Assembly (NCBI RefSeq): GCF_000143415.4
Contig: NW_003314305.1
Location: 619,709-683,708 of the forward strand
Direction of reading: 5' to 3'
Source: Selaginella moellendorffii
Taxonomy: Eukaryota > Plantae > Lycopodiophyta
DNA: 64,000 bases
Shown: in pieces, positions 13,607 to 49,415 of the stretch
Numbering within the stretch: the stretch's first letter is position 1
Layout of the letters: each line of letters opens with the position of its first letter
Program-made: the position numbers and the translations under genes
Notes under the pieces: generated by a model
Told to the model about the DNA's origin: nothing
The model's database searches: none
What the model saw: only the letters and a program-made list of their open reading frames with translations

Positions 13607-19870
<6,264 letters not shown>

Positions 19871-20127: not shown

Positions 20128-23100
20128 ATGGCGCTCAACATGAAGAGCCTGACGCAGGCGCTTGCCAAGACCGCCGCGGTGATCGAGAAGCACGTCCAGA
20201 GCACCGTCCAGGAGGTGACCGGGCCCAAGCCGCTCCAGGATTACGAGCTGGTTGAGCAGATCGGGTCGGGAGGTCCGGCCCTTGCGTGGAAGCTCTACTC
20301 GGGACGGCCAAGGAACAAGGCCGAGCACGCTCACAATCCTGAGGTCTGTGTGTGGGTTCTAGATAAGAAGCTCTTGTCGGAGACGAGGCAGAGGATTGGA
20401 ATCACCAAGGCGGCAGAGGATGCGTTTCTAGAGGTTGTGAGGGCTGATGCGGGGCAGATGCTCAAATTGAGGCATCCGGGAGTTCTTCGAGTGGTCCAGG
20501 CGCTGGACGAGAGCAAGACGGCAATGGCGATGGTGACGGAACCAATCTTTGCGGCGGTCGCGAATGTTCTTGGCAACTTGGAAAACGTTTCAAAGACACC
20601 TAAAGAGCTCAGAGGCTTGGTACGTATGCTGTTTCTTCTATAAGTGAAAAAGAGTAAATCTTCTTTGCAGGAGCTTGGGCTCTTGGAGATCAAACACGGA
20701 CTGCTCCAGCTAACGGAAACTCTGAGTTTCTTGCACAACAATGCGCAGCTTGTTCACAGAGCCATATCACCCGAGGTAGGCTGTGCATCACAGCAGCTTC
20801 TCATCAATTAATTCGGTTTTCTTCCGCAGTCAGTTTTTATCACATCCAGTGGATCCTGGAAGTTCGGCGGGTTTGGATTCGCAGCGACTGTAGAACAAAC
20901 TGCTGCTGAAGCTGGGGCGGGAGCATCTTTTCTCTATCCAGTACGTGTAACTCATACCAGTTTGCGTGAGAAGTGCTCATTGAGTATCCGTGTCTTCAGG
21001 AGTATGATGTGGACGAAGTTGTGATGCCTCTGCAACCACCATTGAATTATACCGCGCCAGAGCTAACGCGAAGTAATGGGAACCCGGGATCATGTTCTGA
21101 CATTTTCAGTTTGGGATGCCTTATATACCATCTCCTGTCTCGTGAACCTTTGGTGCTGTGCAAGAACAATCTAAGAGCGGTAAGGCCTCCAAGCATTGGC
21201 AGGTGATGTGAATGTCTAATCCATATGCTCTGCAGTACAAGGCCAAGGTACAGTATCTGGCTAGTGCAAGCTTTTCAAAGATTCCTCCCGAGCTTGTACA
21301 TGATTTGAAACGTATGCTGAGCCCGGCAGAGCTTTCCAGACCAACTGCCTCAGAATTCACTGGTACGCGTAGGTTTTTCTTGATAACCGTGATACCGATT
21401 TTTTCTCTCTGTTATTCATCAAGGTTCCCCATTCTTCCGAGAAGATACAAGACTGAGAGCACTAAGATTTTTGGATCATATGCTTGTAAGTTACTGCTAC
21501 TGTTTCGAAGAAATAACCAACTGGGATGGTTATAGGAACGAGACAACATCCAGAAATCTGACTTCTTAAAAGCGCTTTCAGGCATGTGGACGGAATTCGA
21601 TCCTCGTGTGCTCCGTTACAAGGTTTGCAGTCATACCCACGTGCGAATCCATGTTTTACTAACAGTTTGTAAGCCAGGTATTGCCGCCGCTTTGTTTGGA
21701 GCTGAGAAATGTGGTCATGCTTCCGATGGTGCTGCCAATGGTTCTTACAATTGCCGAGTCTCAGGTCTGTTTCCTTTTTTTTTTCCTATGTTGTAAAAGT
21801 ATATATATCGAGTTCACCTAGGGAGCTTAGTATACTGCTGCAGGAAAAGGCTGATTTTGAATCCTCGACTCTTCCAGCATTGCTCCCTGTCTTGAGCTCA
21901 GCAACTGGCGAATCTCTTTTATTGCTGGTTAAACATGCTGCGTTATTGATAAATAAGGTACAAGGTACTCTTGTGCACTTTTAAAGGTCTTTTGCCTTAA
22001 GCTTGTTCTTTTCACTTGTTCCAGGTTACCTCAGAACATCTATCGACGAGTGTTGTTCCAATGCTCGTTCGGGCATACGATGATCCAGATGCGAGGATGC
22101 AAGAGGAAGTGTTAAAACGTACAATTGGCATTGCGAAACAAATAGATTATCAGGTGGGTGTGTCAGCATCTCTTCTGGTAACCTCGTCACACTGGCTTGC
22201 AGATTCTTAAGCAGTCGATCTTACCCAGAATACACGGCCTGGCTTTGAAGACAACAATAGCTGCGGTAAGACTTTATGGTTTCTTTGAATTTTTCTTTTT
22301 CACACCGTGTTCCTTTCTGCAGGTTCGCGTAAATGCACTTTTGTGTCTGGGTGAGCTTGTCCCTCGACTGGATAAAAACTCATTCAAAGAAGTTTTACAA
22401 ACATTGCAACGATGTACCGCTGTGGATCATTCTGCTCCAACTCTAATGTGCACCCTGGGGGTTGCCGATGCCAGTTACAAACAAGTACTGTCTTGTTTCT
22501 TGCAAAGTTTACTGGACTCACTGCCTTGTCACAGTTTGGCGTGGAATTTGCTGCCGAACATTTGTTACCACTCTTGACACCACTATTGACGGCTCAACAG
22601 CTCAATCTCCAGCAATTCACGAAGTACATGCAGTTTGTGAAAGAAATATTGAGGTTCGCCAATCATTTCAATGCTATTCTAGGGACCCGCAGTTGATAAC
22701 AAGCTTCCTTTTCGGCAGGGAAATTGAAGAGAAGCGGGGACTCAAGGATGGCGAGGCAGCCAAAGAAGGGATCAGTATGAACGGAGGGCCCGCGTCAACC
22801 AAGGGAAACAGCTGGGACGCGGACTACTGGAGCTCGGGAGTTTCCAAAACGCAGGCGATTTCTTCGGCCACAAAATCTGAGCAAGTTGCCGCCATCTTCT
22901 CTTCCGCGACAACAACACCAGCAGAGAGTTCCATTTTCTCATCCACGACAAAGCCAGAGAAGCCTGTCTCGCCAGACTTTTCTACTCCAAATGCCAGGCC
23001 TCTCAACGAGAGAACTCCGACGCCAACAATTTCAGGGGGCATGCCTCTGGACTGGGAGTGGCCACCGAAAGCAGGCACAGGCACGGTTGGAGCTAGCACC

Positions 23101-23481
23101 ACTCAAAGCTTCTCGTCCGGGGCACCAGACGTGAGCAGTTCCTTTGGAGACGATTTCGATCCATTCGCAGATTGGCCTCCGCGAAACAGCTCTGGCAACG
23201 CGGTATACGGAGTGGCTTCCTCCCTGAGCAGCAGCAGCAGCATCAGCAGCATCAGCATCAACAACAACAAGAATCACAACAACAACGGCATTGCTACCAA
23301 GCTGGACGATTTCTTCTCGTCGCCAGGCCAGTCTCAGCCGCCACTCAAGCTCGCGCCACCGCCACCTCCAGCAGCATCGTCAGGGATGAGGGGCCGAGGA
23401 AGGAGTTCTCATTCTCTTCGCGGCGGCATTGGTGCTAACTCGAGAGCCTCGTTGAAGCAGCAACAGGATTTGTTGCAATAG
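20128..23481 (+). CDS. SCYL2: SCY1-like protein 2 (pseudokinase, HEAT repeats, disordered C-tail)
   Basis: [107 protein letters not shown]. Confidence 0.93.
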
Positions 23482-23720
23482 CAGGTCGCTTCTTTGAAAC
23501 TTGCGGAAAAAGTTTGACCTGTTTGTCCAAGAACTAAGAACCCTAAAAACAGAGATCAACGGTGAGGATTTGCCATGTGCTACACTATATAATGTTAACT
23601 TCTCCGCTTCTAGGTTTAGGTCGGCGCTTGGAAGGTGGCGCGGCAGGGCCAGTGCATCCAAGGTATGATCGCGCCGCGTTTTCGCTACTCCTTCTCGTGC
23701 CGCGTTTTCGCTACCAGGCA

Positions 23721-24687
23721 ATGGCGACATCCGAAGAGAAGCCCGAGGAGGAGGCTCCTCCTGTTCCCGGTCCCGACGAGATCGTGGTGCTTATCCAGTA
23801 CACGGAGAAAGATCTCACATTCGCTCATCTGGCCAAGAAGAGTGCGAAGGCTCATGATGTGATTGCTGCTTGTGCAGTCAAGGCTGCGAACATGATCTCA
23901 GCGGCTACTGGCATTGACCGGAAGGACCTCACACTGTACCCACCAGGTATGTAGTCCTTGCGAGATCACACACATTGGTAACTTCATTTTTCTATTGTTT
24001 TTTTCAGCTTTCCTCAATGCGGACAGGACTGTGAGCCAGTGGGCTGCGATTGCCCGTCCTCCTACTCTCATTGTTTCAACGTTGAAGAAGAAGGGCCTTG
24101 TTGCCCAGAAGGAGAGTCTCAGCAAGCAGTACAATGCTTCTCTTGATTTTGTGACCTCGCAGCTCAAGAATGCAGAGGACGCAAAGAAGGATGTAGAGGA
24201 CGCAAAGAAGGATCTGGAGGGCAAGTTAGAGACCAAAAACAGGCAGCTGGCCACTCAGCTGCAAACTAAGAACAGGCAGCTGGCCGAGAAGACCACACAC
24301 GTCAACAATCTCGAGAACCGGGTCGAGCAACTTCGTCAGGACTTTCAAGCAGCCATGAGCCAGCAAACCCGCGAGATCCAAGCTTTGAGGGTGGATAGCC
24401 AGGTTTTGACCCGGAAGGTTGAGGTTCTGACCCAGCAGAATGAGGTTCTGACCCGGAAGGTTGAGGTTCTGACCCGGAAGGTTGAGGTTCTGACCGAGCA
24501 GAATGAGGAGCTCAAGCAGCAGAGCTTACTGCTCTCTACAGTGACTCAGCAGGGCAGGGCTCTTGCTGATGCAAATCAGGTTCTCACAAATGAGAACCAG
24601 GCAACACGTGCTGAGGTGGCAGCCTTGATGAGCAGGGTGAACAAGCTGGAGACATACATCTATGGTGCTGATCGTGTCCTTCAGTAG
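23721..24687 (+). CDS. Uncharacterised coiled-coil protein (2 exons) with 21-bp EVLTRKV/EVLTQQN heptad repeats
   Basis: ATG at 23721, GT-AG intron at about 23948-24008, long heptad region, tandem 21-mers gaggttctgacccggaaggtt at about 24400-24510. Confidence 0.65.
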
Positions 24688-24819
24688 CGGTTCTTTGGGC
24701 TAGAGGTGGGTTGGCTAGACCGTTTATTTCTTTTTGGGCAGTGGCAGATAAACGGTGGGACTTTTGATGATGTAAATTTCGATCGATCGCGAGTTTAATC
24801 TTTTGGTTGTGCAAAAGTA

Positions 24820-25105
24820 ATCTCCTTTCTCCAGCATCTCCGCCAGCTGCTTCTCGCCCTCGTACACGTTGGGGATGCTGAAGACGATGTTGTCCCGAGT
24901 GACAAGGGCTGCCAGCCGAGTCTAGTGAAGCCACAACCTCGGGCTTTGCAAGGCCGGGTGCGATGGTGGTGACGATCCTCGCCAATCCTTCTTCAATGCC
25001 GTGAAAAGAGTATGTACGTGAAGCCATTCTCGTCCTCTGTCTTCCGAAAGAGCTGGATCGCCTGTCCGTCCTGGCAGTAGCCATTTTGCACGCGGCTCTC
25101 CTCCA
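24820..25105 (-). pseudogene. Decayed fragment of the P-class PPR gene
   Basis: ctccagcatctccgccagc.gcttctcgccctcgta and agagctggatcgcctg..cctggcagtagccatt match about 27505-27895, with deletions. Confidence 0.8.
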
Positions 25106-25279
25106 AGACCTCCAACTCGAGAAGAACAGTCACTGGTGCACACACGTCAACTCTTTGGAATTAAGTCATCTTTTCCTTCCCTTGAGAACTTTGCAAGCCT
25201 TTTGCACACCTGTAAAAACTTAAAGAATACAACCATAACCAGATCCATATTTTATATACCTCTCTTTTTCACGCCTTCC

Positions 25280-25990
25280 ACGAATGGCTTGTACGCCTTG
25301 ATGGCTGCCTCGCACAGAGCGTAAAATCCAAAACGCGAACTCTTGCCAAGACATCGGTCAAGGTTTCACACGAGATAACTTTCCCTTTGCCATGTCCACC
25401 TCGACTCAAAGCATGAACTTTCACGATCCAGATGCTCGTCTCGGCTTGCGACATTGTAAACTGCAAGTTTTGCTTGTCTTGGCGGCCTTTGTTTGCTTTG
25501 CTATAAGTCTTCCTTGCAGATTCGGGATGCTATGAGATTTGTTGAGGTGGTTTCGAATGAACCCGAAAAAGATGTGGTGGCGCACACTTTTGTCCAGCTT
25601 AGCAACTCACTTCAGCACATTTTCCAGCACCTCTCACAGTCTCGGTCGCGACTTTTCACCTTACTCTGACCTTGTAACCCAACAGCTCATGGATGCAAAG
25701 GGAGTGGCGAAGAAAGAGTTGGAAGGCGAGCTGAGCACGAAAACTATTTAGCTCGAATGACTTCAACAGTCGGCAAGGACAATTTCGAGTAGTGGCTGAC
25801 AGTATGAACCAGAAGCAGGAGATTGAAGGCTTTCAGTAACCAGGTTGAAGCGATAAGTGAGCATATCAAGATGATCAAACAGGAGAATGAGGAGATCAAA
25901 CAACAGAATGAGAATCTCAAGCATCTTACTCGCAAGATTCATGTCCTAAGTGAGCAATGTCAACGAGAGTGAGAAGCAGGAGAAGGAAAC
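25280..25990 (+). pseudogene. Degenerate paralog of the coiled-coil gene
   Basis: YSDLVTQQLMDAKGVAKKELEGELSTK and IKQENEEIKQQNENLKHLTRKI resemble LDFVTSQLKNAEDAKKDLEGKLETK / LTEQNEELKQQ, interrupted by stops and frameshifts. Confidence 0.55.
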
Positions 25991-26147
25991 CTGAGTAGCT
26001 TAAGTTATGTTGCTATTTTCTCTTCATTGATATGTAGCAATGCATTTCTATCTTCTTAAGCAAAGCTGTTTGGCAATCCTCCAGCAATTTGCTTTTCTCA
26101 CAGCCTTATTCGTGACAGCTTTCTGCTACACATGAGATTAGAAACGA

Positions 26148-26318
26148 TTACGGTCGCTTGTAGAACCCAGAAGCGGGAACTTCCAAATGAGGAACCTTGA
26201 TCACTCCGTACACCATCTTCGTCTCTTGGGCCATGGGGCGCATTGCAACACCATGAAAAGCAACATTAAGAACCACAACCAAGATTGCGACCACTATGAT
26301 CTGCAGCTTCTTCATCAT
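26148..26318 (-). CDS. Candidate small secreted peptide precursor (56 aa), IDA/PIP-like
   Basis: MMKK followed by a long hydrophobic stretch and GVA|MRP (signal-peptide-like); C-terminus YGVIKVPHLEVPASGFYKRP; TATA box and W-boxes upstream. Confidence 0.65.
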   Translation of the reverse strand: MMKKLQIIVVAILVVVLNVAFHGVAMRPMAQETKMVYGVIKVPHLEVPASGFYKRP

Positions 26319-26362
26319 GGTGAATGAATCCTCCTCCTTGCGAATGAATGAAGACACTCACA

Positions 26363-26502
26363 TTTTTTATAGGGACTAGTTTTGCTGTGTGTACGAAAGT
26401 AAATGTGCATGACTTACTTGTTTGACTGACTAAGTCGTAGTCAAAGACACTGTTCTAGTTAGTCAAACACCAGAGTCTAGTCCACGACACTGCTTCAGTC
26501 AA
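26363..26502 (-). promoter_or_regulatory. TATA box plus four perfect W-boxes (TTGACT) upstream of the peptide gene
   Basis: TATAAAAAA on the minus strand at 26371-26363. TTGACT/AGTCAA at 26422, 26439, 26461 and 26497. Confidence 0.65.
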
Positions 26503-26542
26503 ACTTTCAGTGTAACAACATCTAACCCAAGCAAAAAGAACT

Positions 26543-28684
26543 TTAAGAAGAAAAATTCCTGTTATTTCTTCGTTTCTTTCGTGCCTCGAGCTCTCTGATC
26601 ACGTCACCGATCAAGTCGTCAGGCACAAATCCACTATCGATCATCTCCCTGAGAGCTTCTTCCGCGTCATCTTCAGCTTCTTCTTCGCTTTTCTCTTCTC
26701 GATACTGGTGCTTGCAAAGCCCGTCGACGATCGTAGCACACATCTCGCTGCTGGGAATGAATCCCAGCGAGATGAGCTGCTTGAACAGCTCGTGCCCCTG
26801 GAAGATCTTCCCGGCCTTGCACAGCGCCTCCACCAAGATCTCGTAAGAGTTCACGTCGGGGATCCGGCCGCTCTCGATCATCTCCTGGAACAAGTCCTTG
26901 GCATCGCCCAGCCGTCCCTCGCCGCACAAGCGCTCCAAAAGAATGTTGTAAGTGGAGACGCTCGGGAGGAGCTCCTGCTGCTGCGAGGATTTCATCTCCT
27001 CGTACAACCCCCGGGCCTCGTCCACCATCTTCATCTTGCACAGCATCTCGATCACGCACGAGAGATCCACGGACGTGTAGCCAGCCGCTCGCATCTCCTT
27101 CACCAGCTCCAGCGCCTCGACAGCGTTTTTCCTCCGGCAGAGCTCCCTCAACAAAGTCGCATACGAGCACTGCAGAGGTCTGGAGCCTCTGGAAGCCATC
27201 GTCTTGAGTAGCCGGACGCCATCTTCCACCTTGTCCCCCACCACAATCCTCTTGACGAGCTGGTTGATAGATCCCGCCGATGGCAGCGGCAAGTCCCTGT
27301 CCACGAACTCGTCGACGAGCTCCAGAGCCTGCGCTACTTCTCCCCGTTTCGTGAAAGAGTCCAGCATCACCGACGCGATGACAGCATCCGGCTTGCACCC
27401 TTGCTCCATCATCCTCCGGAAGAGCCGATAAGCGTCGCCGTATCGACCAGCCTTGTCCAGGCAATCGACGAGCGAGCTGAAGCACACAACGTCCGGCTGG
27501 AGCTTCTTCTCCAGCATCTCCGCCAGCAGCTTCTCGCCCTCGTAGATCTTCCCGACTTTGCAGAACGCGTTGATGAGGATACTATAGACGACGTTGTCCG
27601 GTGAGCAAGACTTCTGGATCATCTCCTTCTTCACCACCATCGCATCGTCGACTCTCCCGGCCTTGCACAGCCCGAGAATGTACGTGCAGTACGTGACTAG
27701 ATTCGGCTCGCAGCCCTTCTCCTTCATCTCCAAAAACATCTCCCTCATCTCCTCCACTCCATCCTTCTTCTTCAATCCCGTGAGAAGAACGTTGTAAGCG
27801 TACGTGTTTGGAGGACAACCATACTCGCCCTCCATCTTCCGGAAGAGCTGGATCGCCTGCTCCATCTTCCCTCCATCCTGGCAGTAGCCATTCAAGATCC
27901 CAATGCATGACCCCAGCGGCGGCGCCACCTTCCTCCGGATCATCTCCTCGAAGAGCTCCACGGCCTCGTCAAAGTATCCATACTTCGCGAGGCCGCAAAC
28001 AATGTAGCTATAGCTCGAGGCCTTGGCAGTGAATCCTCGAGCATGGATCTCTTGGAAGAGATCGAAGGCCTCTTTCACCCTGTGATCCCTTCCCAGGCCC
28101 TCGATGAGCATGAGATACGTCGCGAGCTCCGGCACGACGTTCCTCTTTTGCATTTCGCGAAGCACACCAATCGCGTCGATGGATCGCTTGCCGCGGCAGA
28201 GGCCCATCATGACGCAGAGATAGGTGGCGAGATTGGCCGTGGTGGAGGCCGGGAGATCGCGCAAGAGCTTCACGGCGGCATCGAGATCCCCGGCCTGGAC
28301 GTAGGCGTTAGCGAGGATTCCATAGCTGGAGGCATCGGGCGGGGCGAGACTCTTGAGCTGGGAGTCGAAAATCCCGTGCGCTTCCCTGTGGCGGCCGTTC
28401 TTGATCAGCGCCACGAGCAGCGCGTTGCAGGCCTGGAATCCATGGCGAAATCCGGGCAGGCCGGACGCCCACGCGAAGCATTGGAGCGCGGCATTGGCGC
28501 TGGGAGACCTCTCGAGCGCCTTGCCCAGCGAGAAGGCGCTGGGCACAAAATCCAGCCCCCGTAGCGACGCATCTGGATCCCTGCTCGACAATGCCGCCAG
28601 CAGCGCCGCGCAGTGCTGCGAACCCTCGGGCGCTGCCGCCGACCTGGAGAGAACCGCGAGCGATCGCAATCCCCTTCTCAGCAT
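26543..28684 (-). CDS. P-class pentatricopeptide repeat protein (713 aa), probably mitochondrial
   Basis: Intronless; tandem 35-aa repeats (e.g. PNLVTYCTYILGLCKAGRVDDAMVVKKEMIQKSCSPD); MLRRGLRSLAVLSRS presequence. Confidence 0.93.
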   Translation of the reverse strand: MLRRGLRSLAVLSRSAAAPEGSQHCAALLAALSSRDPDASLRGLDFVPSAFSLGKALERSPSANAALQCFAWASGLPGFRHGFQACNALLVALIKNGRHREAHGIFDSQLKSLAPPDASSYGILANAYVQAGDLDAAVKLLRDLPASTTANLATYLCVMMGLCRGKRSIDAIGVLREMQKRNVVPELATYLMLIEGLGRDHRVKEAFDLFQEIHARGFTAKASSYSYIVCGLAKYGYFDEAVELFEEMIRRKVAPPLGSCIGILNGYCQDGGKMEQAIQLFRKMEGEYGCPPNTYAYNVLLTGLKKKDGVEEMREMFLEMKEKGCEPNLVTYCTYILGLCKAGRVDDAMVVKKEMIQKSCSPDNVVYSILINAFCKVGKIYEGEKLLAEMLEKKLQPDVVCFSSLVDCLDKAGRYGDAYRLFRRMMEQGCKPDAVIASVMLDSFTKRGEVAQALELVDEFVDRDLPLPSAGSINQLVKRIVVGDKVEDGVRLLKTMASRGSRPLQCSYATLLRELCRRKNAVEALELVKEMRAAGYTSVDLSCVIEMLCKMKMVDEARGLYEEMKSSQQQELLPSVSTYNILLERLCGEGRLGDAKDLFQEMIESGRIPDVNSYEILVEALCKAGKIFQGHELFKQLISLGFIPSSEMCATIVDGLCKHQYREEKSEEEAEDDAEEALREMIDSGFVPDDLIGDVIRELEARKKRRNNRNFSS

Positions 28685-28729
28685 TTCCCCAAATATCTTC
28701 GCGACCCCCAGAAGAACCCTAAAATCCCG

Positions 28730-30610
28730 ATGGACAAGAACGAGTGCCTCAAGCTCATCTTGGCGTGCAAATCCCTCCCAGCCGCCAAGGAGATCGATCG
28801 CAAGCTCCAGCCAGACCTAGTTCTTCCCCAAGATCTCTTCCTCCACAACAAGCTCATAGAGATGTATGGCAAATGCGGTAGCGCCCACCACGCCCTAGAA
28901 ATCTTCCACTCCATGTCATACAAGAACTCCTTTACCTGGGATATGACCCTCTTTGCGTGCTCCAGAAATGGGCATCTGGACGATGCCCAGAGGATATTCC
29001 AGGCAATGCCGCGGCACAATGTGGCGTCGTGTACCGCGATGCTTGCAGCATATGCCCACAACGGGCATATTCTCGAGGCCAAGGATGTCTTTGATTCCAT
29101 CCAGCAACCCGATCTCGCCGCGTGTAATGCCATGCTGGCGGCATATGCCCAGAACGGGCATGCTGAGCTGGCAAGCGCCCACTTCCGCCACATGGCCCAA
29201 TGGGACGTTGTCTCATGGACAACCGTGCTGTCCGCAGTTGCGCAGGAGGGGCATGTCATAGCCGCGAGGGAAATCTTCGATGACATGCCGTGCCGGAATC
29301 TCGTGTCGTGGACGGCCATGATGAACGCCTACGGCAGCACCGGCCAAATGGAGCGCGCCAAGTCGATGTTTGATGACATGGCGCTCCGGGACCTCGTGAC
29401 GTGGACTGCCATGGTGGCGGCATATGCCCGGGATGGGCATCCTGACGCGGCAAAGCAAATCTTTTCACAAATGCCAGAGTGGAACATGGTATCGTGGTCG
29501 GCCCTGCTAAACGCATATTCCCAGTCCGGCGCCACGGAATATGCCAAGACCCTGTTCGAGGAGATGCCGCAGCACAACTTAGTGACGTGGACGGCGCTGC
29601 TGTGCGTATACTCCCAGTCCTGGCATCTGGACGAAGCGCGAGAAATATTCCAGAAAATGCCCGAAAGAGACCAAGTTTCTTGGAACGCAATGCTGGCAGC
29701 ATTCTCGCAAAACGGATCAATCAGGGAATCTCAGTCGTGCTTTGATTCAATGCCGCAGCACAACCCAATCTCTTGGAGCTCGCTTCTCTCAGCATATGCC
29801 CAGTCCGGGCATCCCGAAGAATCGAAGAGAATTTTTGAGTCTATGCCGCAGCGAAGCCCCTCGTCCTGGATCTCGATGGTCGTCGCATATGCCCAGGCCG
29901 GGCACATCGACCACGCACAACATATGTTCGATGCAATGCCGCAGAGAGATCTCGTCGCATGGAACGCGATGCTCGCAGCGCACGCACTCAATGGTCGCAT
30001 CGAAGAAGTCGAGCGATTGTTTGAGCAAATGCCCGATCATGATCTTGTGTCATGGAACGCACTTCTCTCCTCGTATGCCCGGAACGGGCATATCGCCACG
30101 GCCAAGCGCATCTTTGATCGAATGCCCGAGGAGCGCAACCTTGTCTCCTGGAACTCGATGCTTGCCGCTTACACGTACAATGACCACTCGAGCGAAGCGC
30201 TCGATCTCTTTGCGGAAGGAAACGCGATCTTGCTTGACTCTCCGGATCGTCTCAGCTTCGTCTCGGTGCTCATCGCTTGCAGCCACCTGGGACGAGTTTT
30301 CCTGGCGAAGAGCTACTTTGCGTCGATGAGTGGCGACTTTGGCGTGCGGCCGGCGAGGCAGCACTACCGCTGCATGGTCGATCTCCTCGGCCGTGCTGGT
30401 TTTCTACGTGACGCCGAGAGCCTCGTCGCCACCATGCCGTTTGCTCCCGACTCTCTCGAGTGGAGGAGCTTGCTTGGAGCGTCGAGGAGCCACAGCGATG
30501 TCGATCATGGATCTCGAGCTGCGCAAGGAGTTCTCGATCTGGATCCGCGGGATGGAGCTGGCTACGTCCTCCTGGCCAACACCTTCGCCCTGCGAGACAA
30601 GCAAAGCTAA
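28730..30610 (+). CDS. PLS-class PPR protein (S/SS-rich array, E domain, no DYW); putative RNA-editing specificity factor
   Basis: First ATG at 28730 (MDKNECL); 31-aa repeats (DLVTWTAMVAAYARDGH..AAKQIFSQMPE); HYRCMVDLLGRAG.L.DAE.L..TMPFAPD..EWRSLLGA; YVLLAN. Confidence 0.92.
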   Translation: MDKNECLKLILACKSLPAAKEIDRKLQPDLVLPQDLFLHNKLIEMYGKCGSAHHALEIFHSMSYKNSFTWDMTLFACSRNGHLDDAQRIFQAMPRHNVASCTAMLAAYAHNGHILEAKDVFDSIQQPDLAACNAMLAAYAQNGHAELASAHFRHMAQWDVVSWTTVLSAVAQEGHVIAAREIFDDMPCRNLVSWTAMMNAYGSTGQMERAKSMFDDMALRDLVTWTAMVAAYARDGHPDAAKQIFSQMPEWNMVSWSALLNAYSQSGATEYAKTLFEEMPQHNLVTWTALLCVYSQSWHLDEAREIFQKMPERDQVSWNAMLAAFSQNGSIRESQSCFDSMPQHNPISWSSLLSAYAQSGHPEESKRIFESMPQRSPSSWISMVVAYAQAGHIDHAQHMFDAMPQRDLVAWNAMLAAHALNGRIEEVERLFEQMPDHDLVSWNALLSSYARNGHIATAKRIFDRMPEERNLVSWNSMLAAYTYNDHSSEALDLFAEGNAILLDSPDRLSFVSVLIACSHLGRVFLAKSYFASMSGDFGVRPARQHYRCMVDLLGRAGFLRDAESLVATMPFAPDSLEWRSLLGASRSHSDVDHGSRAAQGVLDLDPRDGAGYVLLANTFALRDKQS

Positions 30611-30646
30611 GTTACAACGTTTTCTTTCATCCATACCTGTGAATGA

Positions 30647-32323
30647 ATGGATCGAAAGGAGTGTCTCGAGCTCATTGAGTCTTGCCGGACGCTTCCCAAG
30701 GCCCGGGAGCTCCACGCTCGGATTCTCTCCAGCGGAGCCAGCCTCAGCTCCGACACTCTCATTCTCAACAAGCTCATCGAGATGTTCGGTGCTTGCGGCA
30801 GCATAGAGGACGCTTCCAAGATCTTCGCGTCCATGAACAACTCCAGGAACTCCTACTCTTGGGATTTTATGCTGGCCATCTTCTGCAGGAGCGGTGGAGC
30901 TGCAAATCTCTCCCGAGCCAAAGAACTTTACGACCAAATGCCGTCTCGGAGTTTGGTGGCCTCCACAACTATGCTGCTCGCGTATGCCCAGAACGGGCAT
31001 ATCGAAGAATCCAAAAAGGTCTTCGAAGGAATGCCGGGGAGGGACGTGATCTCCTGGAATGCCATGCTAGCTGCTTTCTCCGGTGCTGGAAGCCTGGAAG
31101 AGATGGAGCGAGTGTTTGCTGGTATGCCCGAGCCGGACTTGGTTTCATGGACCACCTTGCTCGCTGCGTATGCCCAGAGCGGGATCACCATAGCCGCCAA
31201 GAAAACTTTCGATGCTATGCCACAGCTGAATCTCGTTGCCTGGAATTCACTCCTGTCAGCCTATGGAAAGGGTGGTCAGATAGAAAACGCGAGAAGTACC
31301 TTTGAGGAGATGCCCGAGAGAGACCTCATCTCTTGGAACTCCATTCTTGGCGCTTGTGCCCAGATTGGTCATACCAAAGAAGCAAACGTCGTCTTTGCTG
31401 AGATGCCAAGGCGAGATCTGATATCCTGGACCACCATGCTCGTTGGTTATACCCAGCAGGAGAACTTAGCAGCGGCAAACCGAGTTTTCCAGAAAATGCC
31501 CCAGCATGATCTTGTTTCTTGCACCACTGTTCTTGCCGCAAATGCCCGAAACGGTCATCTGGAGAAATCGAAGCACCTGTTTGATCAAATGCCGCAGCGT
31601 GATGTGGTCTCCTGGAACGTCCTGCTGACAATGTACGGTGAGCATGAGCTCGCAAACGAAGCAAAGAAAATCTTCAAAGACATGCCGTACCATAGTCTCG
31701 CTTCCTGGAACTCACTCCTCTCGGCTCATCTCGTCGAGGGAGATTTCTACTCCGCCAGCCAGCTCTTTTCCCAAATGCCGCTCAAGGATTCCATATCCTG
31801 GACGACGATGCTACCTGCTCACGCCGGGAGAAACGATCGTCGCCTAGACACCACCAAGAAGCTGTTTGATACGATCCCATCACCGAGTCTGGTTTCCTGG
31901 AGTGTCCTGCTCAGCCTCTGTGCCCGGGAGAGGAACACGTTCCATTTCTTCCATGCGATGAAGCTTGTAGATGTTCCAGACGAGGCTTGCTTTCTCTCTG
32001 TCCTGCTCGCTTTCAGTCACGCCGGGGAAGTGTCCGAGTGTAGAGCCAACTTTATGTCGATGATCTCGGACTTTGGCATCCGGCCCACCAAGCAACACTA
32101 CTGGTGTATGATCGATGTTCTCGGGCGGGCGGGACGCTTGGTTGATGCTCGAGATCTCATCCTCTGCATGCCTTACATGCCAGATGCGTCCGAGTGGCGA
32201 TGCCTCCTTGCTGCCTGCAGGAGCCACAGAAACTATGAGGACGGAGCACTAGCTGCAAAGATGGTCAAGCAACTCGGCAAGCAAGATGCAGTAACTTACG
32301 TGTTCCTGGCAGGCAGCAAATGA
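30647..32323 (+). CDS. PLS-class PPR protein (S/SS-rich array, E domain, no DYW), tandem paralog
   Basis: MDRKECLELIESC start; 31-aa repeats; HYWCMIDVLGRAGRL.DARDLI..MPY.PD..EWRCLLAACRSH. Confidence 0.92.
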   Translation: MDRKECLELIESCRTLPKARELHARILSSGASLSSDTLILNKLIEMFGACGSIEDASKIFASMNNSRNSYSWDFMLAIFCRSGGAANLSRAKELYDQMPSRSLVASTTMLLAYAQNGHIEESKKVFEGMPGRDVISWNAMLAAFSGAGSLEEMERVFAGMPEPDLVSWTTLLAAYAQSGITIAAKKTFDAMPQLNLVAWNSLLSAYGKGGQIENARSTFEEMPERDLISWNSILGACAQIGHTKEANVVFAEMPRRDLISWTTMLVGYTQQENLAAANRVFQKMPQHDLVSCTTVLAANARNGHLEKSKHLFDQMPQRDVVSWNVLLTMYGEHELANEAKKIFKDMPYHSLASWNSLLSAHLVEGDFYSASQLFSQMPLKDSISWTTMLPAHAGRNDRRLDTTKKLFDTIPSPSLVSWSVLLSLCARERNTFHFFHAMKLVDVPDEACFLSVLLAFSHAGEVSECRANFMSMISDFGIRPTKQHYWCMIDVLGRAGRLVDARDLILCMPYMPDASEWRCLLAACRSHRNYEDGALAAKMVKQLGKQDAVTYVFLAGSK

Positions 32324-32384
32324 ATGAAACTTGTGAGAGCGAAAACGTACCTTGGTAGCTTTCACGGTGCTGCTGTTGACAAAC

Positions 32385-32601
32385 TTAGGCGGAACTGAAC
32401 TCTGCGAGCCACTTCTCGTGCCTTTCAATGTCTACCTTCGTACACTTCTTGAGATCTTGGACAGTGCCTCCTCAAAATCGCACATCGCATTTTCATGTTC
32501 TTTATCTCGTCCCTTGTCTTTGCAGCAATCTTTGACCGCATGCCATTCATGGATGCGTCTCGACAGATGTTCGTCAGGTCGTCTCCACTGTAGCCTTCTG
32601 T
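32385..32601 (-). pseudogene. Orphan katanin p60 C-terminal fragment with deletions and frameshifts
   Basis: Reads TEGYSGDDLTNICRDASMNGMRSKIAAKTRDEIKNMK / AMCDFEEALSKISRSV / DIERHEKWLAEFSSA*, the katanin p60 (KTN1) AAA-lid/Vps4_C end. Confidence 0.88.
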
Positions 32602-33114
32602 TCATTAGGTTACTTATTTGATATTAACATCTGCAGCCATATGGTGATACCAGGCATTGGAATAAAACAGGACTGAAAGTGCTCTTGTGAGTCTATACCT
32701 TCACGATCTTTAAGTTTATTCAAATTAATTCCCATCTGATTTCGTGGTTGGAAGAAATCCTTTACTCCAGCTAAGGTTGTCTGGAAAAAATCAAGCATCC
32801 AGAGAGGTCAAACCATGGTCCTCAAGCAGTCGTTTGTCTTGGGACACAAACCACAGGAATATTTTGAGATTATTTTATGGCCTCATTAAAGGTTAGCTTA
32901 AAGTTTGCTTCATTTATATCTAGTAGATCTTTGATATAGATCCTGATGTATCATTAATGATGATGGCTATAACAAAAAAGAAAAGACTCTTGATAATGTT
33001 ATCATGTGGCAAAAATGCTAAATTACTAAAGTTTAAAGCAACATTAAAAAGGTTAAAGATTTTACCAATTTTATTAAGGATTTCCAAATCAACCTTTAAA
33101 AGGCATTCCAGCTT

Positions 33115-34091
33115 TAAATCCCACAGATTATAAAATATTTTCAGAATATTCTTGTGGTTTATGTTATTCTTTTCTCCCTCATGAACCAGCCATGAACAGT
33201 AGTCTTGAGAAGCTAAATGAACCTTATAGAAGGGAGTTTGAGGCAATACAACCATGAAGAAAAGATGTGCAAATAGCAATACCAACATTGTAATAAACAG
33301 CCACAAAAGAAATAAATTAATACAGTCATAGAAATAAAAGAATGAGAATAAAACAAATGGCTCAAATTATATAATAATACAGCTATAGGACTCAATTCTC
33401 CCCTTCTTGAGGAATGTCATTCAACACTTGAAAGCACTCTCTTTATGTCATCTTTAGTTTCCCACATAGCTTCATCTATAAAATATCCATTCCACTAAAC
33501 AAACAATTTTTAACTTGTCTTTTAATGTGTTTTCAGCAATTTTTGAGCAAAAATATTAGCTACACCAGCCTTTTTAGCATCAATCTCTAAGACCTAGATG
33601 ATGAACTAATCCACGACATCACCAAAATGTAAACATGCTTCAAATTTGCTCACATGGAACATTGAATGAATCTTTAAACTATCTAACAAGTCCAAAGTGT
33701 AAGCAAGATCTCTCACATGCTGCAAAATTATCTAAAGCCCACAATACTATGAAGAAAACCTGAAGATGATGTGAAGAGAGTGTTTTCAAATTTTAGTTAT
33801 GACTTAGATGATATTCCCAAGAAAGGGGACAATTGAATTCTAAAGCCGTATTGTTATATAATTTGAGTTGTTTGTTATATTCTCATTCTTTTATTTTCAT
33901 AATTGTATTGTTATGTGAGAAATCTATATTGCTTTGACCTTTTGTCGCAATATTAATGTTGCTATTTGCACATCTTTTTTCTATGGTTGTATTGCATTAA
34001 ACTCCTTTTATGCAAAACTTATATAGGTTCTCAAAGTTGTCATTCATGAAGGAGAAATATTCTAAGAATATTTTATGACCTGTGGGATTTA
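33115..34091. repeat. Imperfect inverted repeat (arms about 33115-33420 and 33808-34091) in an AT-rich decayed ORF region
   Basis: For example aaagatgtgcaaatagcaa / ttgctatttgcacatcttt, ctcaaattatataa / ttatataatttgag, aaatcccacag / ctgtgggattt. Confidence 0.75.
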
Positions 34092-34092
34092 T

Positions 34093-34930
34093 GGTTAAGC
34101 AGATCAATTAGGCCATTTCCAGTACATTTGTCTAGGGCGTAGGACTATCCATTCAGTAACCCAGTATCAATCACAACCAAAATGATATCTCCAAACATTT
34201 CCAATGTCACCTCTTATGGTTTAGGTGTCCAAGGGGTACTTATATCATGGAAGATGAGGATTATCGCTAGCTCTATCTCTCATTTTTGTAAAGGTACAAA
34301 GCTAAGATTTAAGAATGAAATGAGGTTGTAAATGCATCTAAAGTAATCTTAGGATAGGTTTTTGCACTCTTCTATCTAATTAATACTACTGGTGGTATTG
34401 TCCTTGAGATTGATAATCTTATTGAGTGCTTCGTGGCAAATAGATTCCATCGATTTGCACTAAGACAATTTATCCTTCGTAGTCTAGACTAGATTATTTT
34501 GACTGGCCCATTAACACCAGTACAAACAGTGTTTAACATTCTCTTTAACATTTGGAGAGAACTGGCCAATCACCCACCACATCTTGATGATTTGGCAAAC
34601 TTAGACTGGGAATAGAAATTTCTATCCTTTACTCAATGCATTCCACTTTTTAGGCATTTTATTGAAACATAATAGATTCAATTTCTATGCCTTTTTGGAT
34701 AGAGAACAACAAAAGAACATGTTCCCTAAACTTACCATGAATTCTTTGGTTGCACTTAGAACAAATAGCATAAGTGAACCATTAATTAGATTTGTGTTCT
34801 ATTTGACAATTGGAAAATACAACACAAATTTCATATTCCCACAATAGGACAAACTCCATGGTTTGATAATAAAGGATTTTTTTTAAAAAAAGTCTTGTTT
34901 ACAGAAAACTCTATTATCCCATCAACATGA
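34093..34930 (+). mobile_element. Inverted, rearranged 3' fragments of the Penelope-like element
   Basis: 34093-34324 is the reverse complement of about 41766-42010, and 34326-34930 of about 42290-42896. The ORF KHNRFNFYAFLDREQQK mirrors KHNKFNFYAFLDREQQK. Confidence 0.75.
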
Positions 34931-36628
34931 TATGGGACATATGAGTAGACGTAGTATGGTAAAAAACAAAACTTTGGATTCTTTGCAGAATCTTGCGTTG
35001 AGAAACATGCTGTTTGGCTAGGCAAACCTAATTACAAGTTATATTTCTTCGACTTCATGGCCATGGAAAAGGTATGAAGCAATAGGGAAAACCTTAACAT
35101 TAGGGTTTTTAGCTTGTATCTGCCATTGCTGCATTCTCCAGGAGTGCATCCACAAGTAGAGCAAGTGGGCAACTGCAAGGTTGTGCACTGGCACAACCAC
35201 GTGCATTCCTCGCCCACACCAGGATCAACAGCTACTTTGTTGTGCATCACAAGAATGAGTAGTGCTAATGAAGTGTTTGTTTGGGTCTAGCTCAAAACGA
35301 GCTCACACCCACTACTAAGGTCGCAAGGAATCTTACTACCACTTTCTTGGCTGCACAAAAATAGGTACAAATGATTCAGTTTCTACATTTCTCTTCACCC
35401 CCAGCCTGTAAGAACTCTTTATGGCCAAAGCACCAAAACTTAATTCGGCAACACAAGGGGCTTTTATAGACTCTACTTAGGTAGTGTTTGTGATATTGAC
35501 TGATCCAATATCTAATTGCCCCCATAGAAAAAAGACAAAATGATAGTGACTGGACTAGATGGTGAAATTCATAAGGCAACGAAAAGCAATAAAGTTGAGC
35601 ATGTTCTCTAGATTTAGTCCTTGAAAGTCACTTGTGATTTGCAGCTCGGACATGTACCTGAGTACATTGGCTCACGAGCATCAGTCATGCAAGTAGGGTA
35701 ATTAGAATCTTGATGGATGTACATCGAGATTTGGAATGGAAGTGATTTGCACTTATTGTATTTTGTTGTTAGAAAAGTATCATCAACCCATATGATTTGG
35801 ATTTGAAGGCTCAAGAAATGAGCTGACAGATTTATGAGTAAGCCATTAGTGCCAATAAATGGATTTTCCATCTCATTTTGCATGGCAAGGAATCATAGTG
35901 GATATATCTAGAATGGATTTCCTTTTGATTTGATTTGATTAAAGTCAAGGAAGCGGAGGATCATAGGATTGTTCATCGATACAAGATCATCCATGTACCT
36001 AAATGTATATTTGAAAAGGCAGAGTAAATCATATCTGCCTAATCATGCAAGTCGAGTAAGAAAATTCTACTCAAAGTAAAAAAGGTACAAATTACACCAC
36101 AAAGATGAGCATGAGAAACCCATAGGGATTCCTCAAACCTATCTCTATACTCTGTTCCCCAAGTAGATGATGAAGTTGTTTAGTTTGATGACTTTCATTA
36201 GTTTCATTTTGGTAGCTTTTACGAATGAGTAGTGTAGAGGTTTCTATTCAGCCTCAAATTTGCCATTCTTATTTTGGATCAGAAAAAAAAAGGTCTTTTT
36301 GGAGGTGATTTTGGTGTGCGAAAGCTAAGTTGACAAGATGTGTCATAGGCATCATAAGGCCTTGGCTCCCTTCAAGGGAAATTATTTCACAGCACTTGGT
36401 TATATCTCTAGTATAGATCATTGTGATTCTATTAAGGGAATTTATTGTAAATTCTTGTGTAGATCCGAGTATTTAGCATGTGCTTATTTTTCCTCTAAAG
36501 AACTTTGCCTTTTAGGATAGCTGTTAGGATTATTGTGATTTCCAAGAAAACACATCCATCCACATTTATTAACCAGTGCATCTTGTTTTTATGCACTTTG
36601 TAGATTTCCATAAATATGGGAGATTTGG

Positions 36629-45090: not shown

Positions 45091-45704
45091 TTCGTCGCAC
45101 ATGCAAGATGAAACCAGCAAGATGAAAAAACTCAATTTTGCAAGTTAAATCCAAACCTTGAAGGGGGAATAAATGATTCAACTCCAGGGGTAAGAACAGT
45201 CTTTTCCACTTACACTAGGTCTCATGTAGCCAACTTCTTGTAGACGGAGGAAGAGCTCTCTAGGTTTGGTAGTTTCCTCAAGAATCCAACTTTTGATTGA
45301 GTGAGAGAGCATACAGGCCGCATTCAGGAGTAAGGTGTTGAATATCACTAGCTTGATCACTTACGTGCTACATGGACTGGGAGTGGTAATCTATTGGGGC
45401 TAGGAGTGGACATTTAAGTCTTTCTTCTCACTCAACTTTCAGTTGGTGGGGTTTGTACATTATCATTGTCCAGGTATGTCAGTTCGTTCATTTCTTAGAG
45501 AGTTCTTACTGTGGGTTTTCCGATACAGAGATCATCCAAGAAGGCCTGCCTCAACAACATTGCTGGTGATGGCACTTGGAGGAAAATCGTTTATGCTGTA
45601 GTGCTAGTGTTGGTCATTTTAACGCTGTTGCCGTTGTGGGATGGCTTGGCCACCCAAGAACCGGACTTGCTATCTATTTATGTGAAAGCTTCCAGGAGAA
45701 ACGA
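45091..45704 (+). repeat. Left arm of a ~600-bp inverted repeat (pairs with 48806-49370)
   Basis: gatgaaaaaactc..ttttgcaagttaaatc, acagtcttttccacttacac, gagtgagagagcatacaggccgcattc and tatttatgtgaaagcttccaggagaaacga are reverse complements of sequence in 48806-49370. Confidence 0.88.
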
Positions 45705-45715
45705 CGGTTTTTTCC

Positions 45716-48700
45716 CCAACGTGAACTCTTAGGTGGAGGCGCTGTGCAAGGCCAGGAAGATCTTCAAGGGACACGAGCTGTTCAAGCAGCTCATCTCTCT
45801 GGGATTCATTTCCAGCAGCGACATGTGCTACAATCGTCAACAGGCTTTGTAGGCACCAGTCTCAAGAAGAGAAAAGCGAAGAAGAATATGAAGATGATGC
45901 AGAAGAAGCTCTGAGGGAGATGATCGATAGTGGATTTGTGCCTGACGACTTGATCAGAGAAACAAAACGAAGAAATAACAGGAATTTTCTTAAAGATTTT
46001 GTTTCCTTGGATTAGACTTTGTTACACTGAAAGTTTGACTGAAGCAGGGTCTTGGACTAGACTCTGGTGTTTGACTAACCAGAGCAGTGTCTTTGACTAC
46101 GACTAAGTCAGTCAAACAAGTGAGTCATGCACGTTTACTTTCGTACACAGAGCAAACTAGTCACTATGAGTCTCTCCATTCATTCTCAAGGTTTTTACAC
46201 TTGGAGGAGGATTCATTCACCATGATGAGGAAGCTGCAGATCATAGTGGTCGATCTTGGTTGTGATTCTTAATATTGCTTTTCACGTCCCATAGCCAGGA
46301 AGATGGTGTACGGAGTGATCAAGGTTCCTCATTTGGAAGATCCCGTTCTTGGGCCTCAGGTCTTCTACAAGAGAAAGAAGTCACCGTAATCGTTTCTGTA
46401 GAACAAAGAATAAGGCTGTGAGAAAAACAAATTGCTTAAATACCAAAAGAAAAAATAACACCTAGTTTTAGAAACAGTAGCACCAAATCTTAAGCTACTC
46501 AGATTTCCATCTCCTGCTTCTCATTCTCGTTGACATTGCTCACTTAGGACGTGAATCTTGTGAGTTGATCATTCTCTTGTTTTATCTTTTCATTTTCTTG
46601 CTTGATCTTCTCATTCTCCTGTTTGATAATCTCATTCTCCAGCTTAATCATCTTGTTATGCTCACTTATCCTTTTAACATGGTGACTGAAAGCCTTAACT
46701 CTCCTGCTTCTGGTTCATACTGTCAGCCACTAATCCAAGCTCTCGAGATGCAGACTGTTGAAGTCATTCGTCTTGTTGGCCAGCTGAGTAGTTGTCGTGC
46801 TCAGCTTGCCTTGAAGGCCTTCCAACTCTTTTTTCGCCACTCCCTTTCCATCCATGAGCTGTTGGGTTACAAGGTCAGAGTAAGGTGAACAGTCGCGACC
46901 GAGACTGTGAAAGGAAAATCTGCTGAAGTGAGTGGCTCCTTTGCTATCACCCACTTCCAGCTTCCGCCAAGACAAGCAAAAGAATGTCACGAGCAACGAG
47001 ACGAGCATCTGGATCGTGGAGCTAACGGAAGTTCATGCTTTAACTCAAGGTGGACATCGCAAAGGGAAAGTTATCTCGTATGAAACATTGACCCAGCTTT
47101 TGCAAGAGATCATGCTTTGGATTTTACGCTCTGTGTGAGGCACCCATCTAAGGTGTGCAAACCATACGTGAAAAAGAGATGGATCTGGTTATGGTTGACC
47201 CATTATAGTTATGCAAAAGAGGAAGGAATAAACTTTTAGGGCATAGTGGAATCTAGCACATGGCAAATCCACACCGTTGATCTCAAACGGGTCAAACTTT
47301 TTAGTTTCAAAGAAGCGACCTGCTATTGCAACAAATCCTGTTGCTGCTGCTTCAACGAGGCTCTCGAGTTAGCACCAGTGCCGCAGAGAGAATGAGAACT
47401 CCTTCCTCGGCCCCTCATCCCTGACGATGCTGCTGTTGAGTGGCGGTTGAGACTGGCCTGGCGACAAGAAGAAATCGTCCAGCTTCGTTGCAATGCGGTT
47501 GTTGTGATTCTTCTTGTTGTTGATCGCTGCTGCTGCTGCTGCTGGTGTTGTTGCGGAAGAGTGACCGAAGAAATCGTCTGCGTTTTGGAAACTCCCAAGC
47601 GCCAGTAGTCCGTGGCCCAGATGTTTCCCTTGGTTGTCATACTGATCCCATCCCATCTTTGGCTGCCTCGCCATCCTTGAGTCCTCGCTTCCTTTCAATT
47701 TCCCTGCTGAAAAAGAAGCTTGTTATCAACTGCGGTCCCTCAAATAGCAATGAAATGATTGGGGAATTCCTTCACAAACTGCATGTACTTCATGAATTTC
47801 TGAAGTTTGAGCTGTTGTGGTAACACATGTTCGGCAGCAAATTCCACGCCAAACTATGACAAGAGAGTGAGTCCAGTAAAATTTATAAGGAACAAAAAAG
47901 TTTTCCGCGAAATCAGCCTCTTCCGCAAAGAGATCGAGCCGTCATTGTATGTGCAAGCGGCAAGCATCGAGTTCCAGGAGACAAGGTTGCGCTCCTCGGG
48001 CATTCGATCGAAGATGCGCTTGGCCGCAGCAATATGAGGATGTGCAAGGCTGGGACGATGGTGGTGAAGAAGGAGAGTCTTGCTCTCCGGACAACGTCGT
48101 CTATAGTATCCTCATCAACGCGTGCTGCAATGTCTGGGAAGATCTACGATGGCGAGAAGCTGCTGGCAGAGATGCTGGAGAAGAAGCTCCAGCCGGACGT
48201 GGTGTGCTTCAGCTCGCTCGTCGATTGCCTGGACAAGGCTGGTCGATACGGCGACGCTTATCGGCTCTTCCGGAGGATGGAGAAAGGGTGCAAGCCATCG
48301 CGTCGGTGATGCTGGACTCTTTCACGAAACGGGGAGAAGTAGCGCAGGCTCTGGAGCTCGTCGACGAGTTCGTGGACTTGCCGCTGCCATCGGCGGATCT
48401 TGAACCAGCTCGTCAAGACGATTGTGGTGGAAGATGGCGTCCGGCTACTCAAGACGATAGGGAGCTCTGCCGGAGGAAAAACGCTGGCGAGGCGCTGGAG
48501 CTGGTGAAGGAGATGCGAGCGGCTGGCTAAACGTCCGTGGATCTCTCGTGCGCGATCGAGATGCTGTGCAAGATGAAGATGGTGGAGGTTGTACGAGGAG
48601 ATGAAATCCTCGCAGCAGCAGGAGCTCCTCCCAAGCGTCTCCACTTACAATATTCTTTTGGAGAGCTTGTGCCGCGAGGGACGGCTGGGACTTGTTCCAG

Positions 48701-48806
48701 GAGATGATCGAGAGCCCCCGACGTGAACTCTTACGAGATCTTGGTGGAGGCGCTGTGCAAGGCCGGGAAGATCTTCCAGGGGCACGAGCTGTTCAAGCAG
48801 CTCATC
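45716..48806. pseudogene. Inverted, deletion-riddled, circularly permuted copy of the 22.5-30.2 kb block (PPR 3' end, peptide gene, coiled-coil relic, SCYL2 3' end, PLS-PPR piece, P-PPR middle)
   Basis: 45716-47880 corresponds to rc(26870 to 22500); 47915-48037 to rc(30220 to 30088); 48041-48806 to rc(27670 to 26770). All pieces are frameshifted. Confidence 0.88.
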
Positions 48807-49370: not shown

Positions 49371-49415
49371 GTAAGTCTCAAGGAACTTAGAAAGAATGCC
49401 AACTTACTTGGTTCC

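What the first reader, a model, noticed from the sequence alone, without database searches (positions are those of the whole stretch)
26148..26502. Candidate WRKY-regulated small secreted signalling peptide (IDA/PIP-like phytocytokine)
Seen: a 56-aa intronless ORF with a signal-peptide-like N-terminus ending GVA|MRP, a TATA box about 50 bp upstream, and four perfect TTGACT W-boxes within 81 bp. The C-terminus YGVIKVPHLEVPASGFYKRP aligns by eye with the IDA extended motif FGYLPKGVPIPPSAPSKRHN. Established: W-box clusters mark WRKY/defence-induced genes, and IDA/IDL/PIP precursors have this architecture and signal through LRR receptor kinases. Inference: an easily missed, divergent immune-peptide gene in a non-seed plant.
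Basis: partly seen in the sequence, partly recalled or inferred. Interest (0 to 1): 0.75.

Follow-up and report, generated by a model that had tools for sequence, protein, structure and literature searches.

The report
Unannotated spikemoss small secreted-peptide gene candidate
A 56-codon reading frame in the spikemoss Selaginella moellendorffii looks like a small defence-inducible secreted-peptide gene, but it shows no similarity to the IDA/PIP peptide hormones, has no relatives anywhere, and is not yet shown to be expressed.

Summary
A 56-aa intronless ORF lies on the minus strand (ATG 26318, stop 26148). Its N-terminus looks like a signal peptide: MMKK, then 17 hydrophobic residues, then HGVA|M. 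A TATAAAAAA box sits 53 nt upstream, and four perfect TTGACT boxes fall within 81 bp (26422-26502). No local shuffle produced such a cluster (0 of 500), and this is the only convincing signal-peptide-like ORF among 268 small ORFs in the window.

The window is Selaginella moellendorffii. The unit begins 41 nt after the stop codon of an intronless PPR gene and is not annotated at NCBI.

The IDA/PIP reading fails. The ORF has no SGPS core, no (K/R)(K/R)HN, no terminal HN and no GxGH. Its similarity to the IDA motif is below the average for shuffled sequences.

No protein family matches, and no relative turned up among 1.84 billion representative proteins. The only paralogue, at 46.0-46.4 kb, is an inverted, decayed copy with a frameshift, an early stop and no TATA box.

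Best reading (about 50%): a lineage-specific, W-box-driven gene for a small secreted or membrane-anchored peptide. Main rival (about 40%): a chance ORF in the 3' flank of the PPR gene. Expression could not be tested here.

Another first-reader note from this scan (s1-405368) reports similar peptide/PPR units elsewhere in this genome. I could not check it.

The parts
26148..26318 (-). 56-codon intronless ORF plus TAA stop; candidate pre-peptide
   Evidence: It starts at the first ATG after the TATA box, with A at -3. It is the only convincing signal-peptide-like ORF among 268 ATG-ORFs of 40-120 aa. Codon-usage score ranks 31 of 225; GC at codon positions 1/2/3 is 59/29/59%.
26244..26318 (-). 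Signal-peptide-like segment, residues 1-25: MMKK n-region, hydrophobic core, HGVA c-region
   Evidence: 9-mer hydropathy up to 3.99 and a single -3/-1 site, GVA|MRPM. Residues 5-25 form an uncharged run of 21, so a signal anchor is also possible.
26151..26243 (-). Putative mature part, 31 aa, no Cys, four Pro, ends YKRP
   Evidence: It contains no IDA, PIP, CEP or CLE motif and no DY motif.
26363..26371 (-). TATAAAAAA, 53 nt upstream of the ATG. It could instead be the poly(A) signal of the upstream PPR gene, 172 nt after that gene's stop.
   Evidence: A TATA[AT]A at -25 to -130 occurs for 16 of 268 small ORFs. It is deleted in copy B.
26422..26502 (.). Cluster of four exact TTGACT W-boxes (one + and three - in window coordinates)
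   Evidence: Four in 81 bp was reached in 0 of 500 shuffles. The cluster is built from a three-fold repeat of about 20 nt plus 10-14 nt inverted repeats.
26105..26110 (-). AATAAG, a possible polyadenylation signal about 40 nt after the stop
   Evidence: Read directly; inference only.
26543..28684 (-). Intronless 713-aa P-class PPR gene on the same strand; its stop codon lies 41 nt before the W-box cluster
   Evidence: It is 99% identical to the NCBI Selaginella moellendorffii PPR protein P0001, at locus L001.
46035..46115 (.). Copy B of the W-box cluster, mirror-image spacing (36, 22, 17 nt)
   Evidence: It belongs to an inverted segmental duplicate, 25276-26862 against 47173-45713.
46222..46389 (+). 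Copy B of the ORF, decayed: a 2-nt deletion leads to TAA at codon 17 (46270-46272), plus 13-nt and 6-nt deletions, two in-frame 9-nt differences near the C-terminus, and no TATA box

Best explanation
This is an unannotated gene candidate found only in Selaginella. It has a compact promoter made of four W-boxes and a TATA box, followed by a short transcript. The first AUG of that transcript opens a 56-aa pre-peptide.

The N-terminal 25 residues would direct the product into the secretory pathway. They would either be cleaved after GVA, releasing a 31-residue cationic, Cys-free peptide, or remain as a membrane anchor.

WRKY factors binding the W-boxes would make the gene inducible by stress or elicitors.

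Shown here: the sequence features, their order and spacing, and that together they exceed chance. Inferred: transcription, translation, secretion, WRKY control and any signalling or antimicrobial role.

It is not a member of the IDA/IDL or PIP/PIPL families.
For: The organism is Selaginella moellendorffii.

The features lie in canonical order and spacing: W-boxes at -104 to -184, TATA at -53, first AUG with A at -3, AATAAG about 40 nt after the stop.

Base rates among the 268 small ORFs in the window: 1-2 are signal-peptide-like, 16 have a TATA box, and 2 have three or more W-boxes within 300 nt upstream. This ORF alone has all three. Assuming independence, about 0.001 such ORFs are expected per window.

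The W-box cluster was reached in 0 of 500 shuffles.

Codon score is in the top 14% and GC3 exceeds GC2, at 59% against 29%.

In the decayed copy B the C-terminal half keeps the same frame and stop across two 9-nt differences.

The 1.5 kb between the annotated neighbours is empty in the NCBI annotation, so no other gene model competes for the region.
Against: No exact record of the ORF exists. No protein of 31-98 aa shares short words with it among 5.8 billion clusters. No hit at E<=0.001 was found among 1.84 billion representatives. There is no Pfam match.

The only paralogue is broken. Differences between copies A and B are mostly amino-acid-changing, judged by eye from the alignment.

Neither the W-box region nor the ORF is more conserved than the neighbouring sequence, between the copies or between the haplotypes.

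The unit lies 41-395 nt after the PPR stop codon, where that gene's 3' UTR may run. The 'TATA box' could be that gene's poly(A) signal.

The scan covered thousands of windows. A rough genome-wide estimate gives between a few tenths and about one chance occurrence of this combination of features.
Confidence: 0.5

Rival explanations
1. There is no gene. The ORF is a chance frame in the 3' UTR or 3' flank of the PPR gene. The W-box cluster arose by local duplication of a unit of about 20 nt and is either non-functional or serves something else. TATAAAAAA is the PPR poly(A) signal.
For: The cluster starts 41 nt after the PPR stop, and the TATA-like element lies 172 nt after it.

The cluster has a repeat and palindrome structure.

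The ORF is not annotated and has no relatives or records.

Copy B is decayed, and no excess conservation is seen.

Many ORFs of 30-70 aa occur by chance in this region.
Against: All gene-like features coincide in the right order on a single ORF, with an expectation of about 0.001 per window. The codon bias is mildly coding-like.
Confidence: 0.4
2. It is a divergent IDA/IDL or PIP/PIPL precursor sensed by HAESA/HSL/RLK7-type LRR receptor kinases.
For: Only the generic layout fits: a signal peptide, a short variable part and a Pro-containing C-terminus with a KR pair.
Against: It has no S[GAV]PS, no [RK][RK]HN, no terminal HN/HH and no GxGH.

The family definitions come from PMC4526919. PMC8462819 states that the C-terminal His-Asn contacts the receptor and is kept in SmIDA1-3, and that PIP/PIPLs arose in angiosperms.
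Confidence: 0.02
3. The conserved element is a non-coding RNA, a hairpin or a miniature transposon rather than a promoter plus coding frame.
For: 10-14 nt inverted repeats flank and lie within the cluster.
Against: No Rfam family matches at E<=1 over 25000-27000. The fold z-score is -1.47, and 15 of 200 shuffles fold at least as well. I saw no target-site duplication by eye, and the window holds only the two copies, both inside a larger segmental duplicate.
Confidence: 0.05

Closest known systems
[quoted passage not shown]
   Same: A small intronless precursor with an N-terminal signal peptide and a short, Pro-containing, Cys-free C-terminal part. PIPs are induced in defence.
   Different: It lacks the SGPS core, the (K/R)(K/R)HN tail or terminal HN, and GxGH. 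Its similarity to the IDA motif is below the shuffle mean. At 56 aa it is shorter than the Arabidopsis IDA/IDL proteins, which are listed as 77-103 aa in PMC4526919.
Lineage-specific stress-induced secreted peptides (phytocytokines) in general, such as Brassicaceae SCOOPs (recalled from my own knowledge, not tested here)
   Same: Small, fast-evolving genes restricted to one lineage, often missed by annotation. They combine a signal peptide with a short active C-terminus and have defence-type promoters.
   Different: No shared motif or homology was found. No family of paralogues was found either, only one decayed copy. There are no expression or activity data.
W-box arrays of WRKY-regulated defence promoters
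   Same: Several TTGACY boxes in both orientations lie close together, within 200 nt upstream of a TATA box. WRKY domains recognise TTGACY (PMC3834811).
   Different: Binding and inducibility are untested. The array lies in the 3' flank of another gene.

Membership tests
IDA/IDL | Core motif S(G/A/V)PS in the C-terminal peptide (PMC4526919) | tested here: not met
   no match. The nearest stretch is VPASGF.
IDA/IDL | (K/R)(K/R)HN after the core; the C-terminal His-Asn contacts the receptor (PMC4526919, PMC8462819) | tested here: not met
   no [RK][RK]HN and no terminal HN/HH. The protein ends in KRP.
IDA/IDL | Sequence similarity to the extended IDA motif above chance | tested here: not met
Local BLOSUM62 score is 17, and 1302 of 2000 shuffles score at least as high.
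PIP/PIPL | GxGH at the extreme C-terminus together with the SGPS core (PMC4526919) | tested here: not met
   neither motif is present.
IDA/IDL and PIP/PIPL | N-terminal signal peptide | tested here: inconclusive
   the heuristic n/h/c regions and the GVA|M site fit. SignalP was not available, and the 21-residue uncharged run could be a signal anchor.
Small post-translationally modified secreted peptides (generic kind) | A conserved C-terminal motif shared by paralogues or orthologues | tested here: not met
   no relatives. The only paralogue (copy B) is a pseudogene, although 41 nt of its C-terminal half are identical. Unannotated copies elsewhere in the genome could not be searched.
WRKY-regulated gene | W-boxes (TTGACY) in the promoter | tested here: met
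   four exact TTGACT boxes in 81 bp, at -104 to -184.
WRKY-regulated gene | WRKY binding and induction by stress or elicitor | not testable with these tools
   No expression or binding data were reachable.

The most novel reading that the evidence does not exclude
A newly arisen or fast-evolving defence peptide gene of a lycophyte, unrelated to any angiosperm peptide family. It would have formed in the 3' flank of a PPR gene together with a locally amplified W-box promoter. That would make it a rare case in which the birth of an immune-inducible secreted peptide, and the death of its duplicate, can be read from the sequence.
Probability: 0.2. Interest if true: 0.6.

Novelty: new variant of a known kind. 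Interest (0 to 1): 0.3.

Why it matters
Nearly all known secreted immune peptides of plants come from flowering plants. A confirmed W-box-driven orphan peptide in a lycophyte would show that such genes also arise in early vascular lineages, and it would be a simple gene to test.

As it stands it is only a well-formed candidate. The practical results are that it should not be counted as an IDA/PIP relative, and that a single RNA-seq check would decide whether it is worth pursuing.

Tried and rejected
- **Exact-sequence look-ups.** The ORF from both haplotypes gave nothing. The window's PPR protein and a 480-aa control ORF also gave nothing. Absence from the collection therefore says little about expression.
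- **Similarity searches.** The word-based search, the exhaustive HMMER search and Pfam found nothing. The best ESM Atlas score was 0.80, which is noise level.
- **Rfam and folding.** Rfam found nothing and the folding of the W-box region was not significant.
- **Route to further copies through PPR relatives.** P0002 is an alternative model of the same PPR gene and has no record. P0017/L002 corresponds to window 48.1-50.5 kb (PPR remnant plus a Med4 gene) and carries no copy of the ORF.
- **Excess conservation.** None was found between copies A and B or between haplotypes.
- **Miniature-transposon reading.** Rejected: no target-site duplication was seen, and there are only two copies, both inside a larger duplicate.
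- **Earlier notes.** A search by sequence found nothing.
- **Not run.** I did not scan the metagenome, prokaryote-genome or viral collections, because they hold no plant genomes. I did not run SignalP, which was unavailable. I searched no spliced or joined models.

Full report
**What is there**

A 56-codon ORF runs on the minus strand from the ATG at 26318 to the TAA at 26148-26150.

The N-terminus has two lysines, then a hydrophobic core (9-mer hydropathy up to 3.99), then HGVA. The only site that obeys the -3/-1 rule is GVA|MRPM, after residue 25. The remaining 31 residues have no cysteine, contain four prolines and end in YKRP.

TATAAAAAA lies at 26371-26363, 53 nt before the ATG. The ATG is the first one after a start site placed about 30 nt past the TATA box, and it has A at -3. 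AATAAG follows the stop by about 40 nt.

Four exact TTGACT boxes lie at 26422(+), 26439(-), 26461(-) and 26497(-). They span 81 bp, at -104 to -184 from the ATG.

**Is it more than chance?**

TTGACT is not enriched in the window as a whole: 32 copies against 45.9 expected. But four copies in 81 bp never arose in 500 block shuffles; the maximum was three, in 10 shuffles. Part of the cluster is a three-fold repeat of about 20 nt with 10-14 nt palindromes, so it grew by local duplication.

Among the 268 ATG-ORFs of 40-120 aa in the window:
- A simple signal-peptide heuristic passes two. Only this one is convincing.
- 16 have a TATA box at -25 to -130.
- Two have three or more W-boxes within 300 nt upstream: one with four boxes (this ORF) and one with three, which I take to be the ORF beside the copy B cluster.

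Assuming independence, about 0.001 ORFs per window should combine all three features. Over the several thousand windows of this genome scan, that rough estimate amounts to between a few tenths and about one chance case. The coincidence is therefore notable but not proof.

The codon-usage score ranks 31 of 225 control ORFs, and GC at codon positions 1/2/3 is 59/29/59%. This is mildly coding-like.

**Context**

The window is Selaginella moellendorffii. The 713-aa intronless PPR gene at 26543-28684(-) is 99% identical to an NCBI protein of that species. The matching locus is L001, on scaffold GL377567.1.

The W-box cluster starts only 41 nt after the PPR stop codon, on the same strand. The NCBI annotation has no gene between the PPR gene and the next model, a gap of about 1.5 kb that holds the ORF.

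This placement creates a real ambiguity. The W-boxes may lie inside the PPR 3' UTR, and the A-rich 'TATA box' could be that gene's polyadenylation signal.

On the other haplotype (L001) the ORF is intact, with one change (Met2 to Ile) and one change in the presumed 5' UTR. That is no less variation than in the neighbouring PPR coding sequence, so polymorphism says nothing about constraint.

**A second copy**

The W-box search showed a mirror-image cluster at 46035-46115. It belongs to an inverted, decayed segmental duplicate, 25276-26862 against 47173-45713, at 76.5% identity counting gaps. The duplicate also carries a remnant of the PPR C-terminus and the neighbouring coiled-coil sequence.

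In copy B:
- The TATA box is deleted.
- The ORF has a 2-nt deletion that leads to TAA at codon 17.
- There are further 13-nt and 6-nt deletions.
- The C-terminal half keeps 41 identical nucleotides, the same frame across two 9-nt differences, and the same stop.

Ungapped blocks are 85-97% identical throughout the duplicate, so the W-box region is not specially conserved. Copy B is a pseudogene. It shows only that the unit predates the duplication.

**Relatives and family membership**

- No exact record of the ORF from either haplotype.
- No protein of 31-98 aa shares three 5-residue words with it among 5.8 billion clusters.
- No hit at E<=0.001 among 1.84 billion representatives.
- No Pfam family.
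- Only noise-level neighbours in the ESM Atlas, best score 0.80.

IDA/IDL and PIP/PIPL are defined by the core S(G/A/V)PS. In IDLs it is followed by (K/R)(K/R)HN; in PIP/PIPLs the C-terminus ends in GxGH (PMC4526919). [quoted passage not shown] PIP/PIPLs are reported to have arisen in angiosperms (PMC8462819).

The ORF has none of these motifs. Membership is rejected.

**Other readings**

No Rfam family matches, and the RNA fold is not significant, with z = -1.47. I found no signs of a transposon.

**Verdict**

The most likely reading, at about 50%, is an unannotated, lineage-specific gene. A W-box/TATA promoter would drive a 56-aa precursor that enters the secretory pathway, either cleaved to a 31-residue cationic peptide or anchored by its N-terminus.

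The main rival, at about 40%, is a chance ORF in the PPR 3' flank beside a locally amplified W-box repeat.

Transcription, secretion, WRKY control and any signalling role are inferred, not shown. They could not be tested, because no plant transcript or whole-genome DNA resource was reachable here. The negative look-ups carry little weight: a control ORF and the window's own PPR protein were also absent from the collection.

An unchecked first-reader note from this scan (s1-405368) reports similar 50-aa peptide/W-box/PPR units on another piece of this genome. If these are related, the case for a real family would strengthen considerably.

No contig here looks human. I searched no spliced or joined models and referred no step.

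Noticed in passing
window 45100-49400 against 22500-30200: An inverted, rearranged and decayed duplicate of the block holding the PPR gene, the small ORF and the coiled-coil sequence. Ungapped blocks are 77-92% identical. PPR remnants lie at 45576-45990 and 48056-48806.
   Followed up: partly
window 14596-19869: A near-perfect tandem duplication: 14596-17561 matches 16904-19869 at 97.9%, with a period of about 2.3 kb. An older third copy lies at 13847-14551.
   Followed up: no
window 26543-32323: Three adjacent intronless PPR genes: a P-class gene of 713 aa on the minus strand, then a 665-aa PLS/E-motif ORF and a 558-aa ORF on the plus strand. The first two are head-to-head and their ORFs overlap by about 70 nt (28613-28684).
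   Followed up: partly
window 25276-25972 (+) and 46500-47173 (-): An unannotated coiled-coil ORF fragment (49 aa ending at 25972) converges on the small ORF. If it is expressed, its 3' UTR would overlap the small ORF in antisense. It matches no family above threshold.
   Followed up: partly
L002 4842-5857 (= window about 49.4-50.4 kb): An annotated Med4 (Mediator subunit 4) gene lies next to a 141-aa PPR remnant that NCBI annotates as a PPR protein. This haplotype pair is only about 92% identical, far below the 98% seen at L001.
   Followed up: no
window 32000-36000 and 42000-44000: AT-rich stretches (35-38% GC) that share repeats at 80-88% identity, for example 34326-34932 against 42895-42288. 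They are probably transposon-derived.
   Followed up: no
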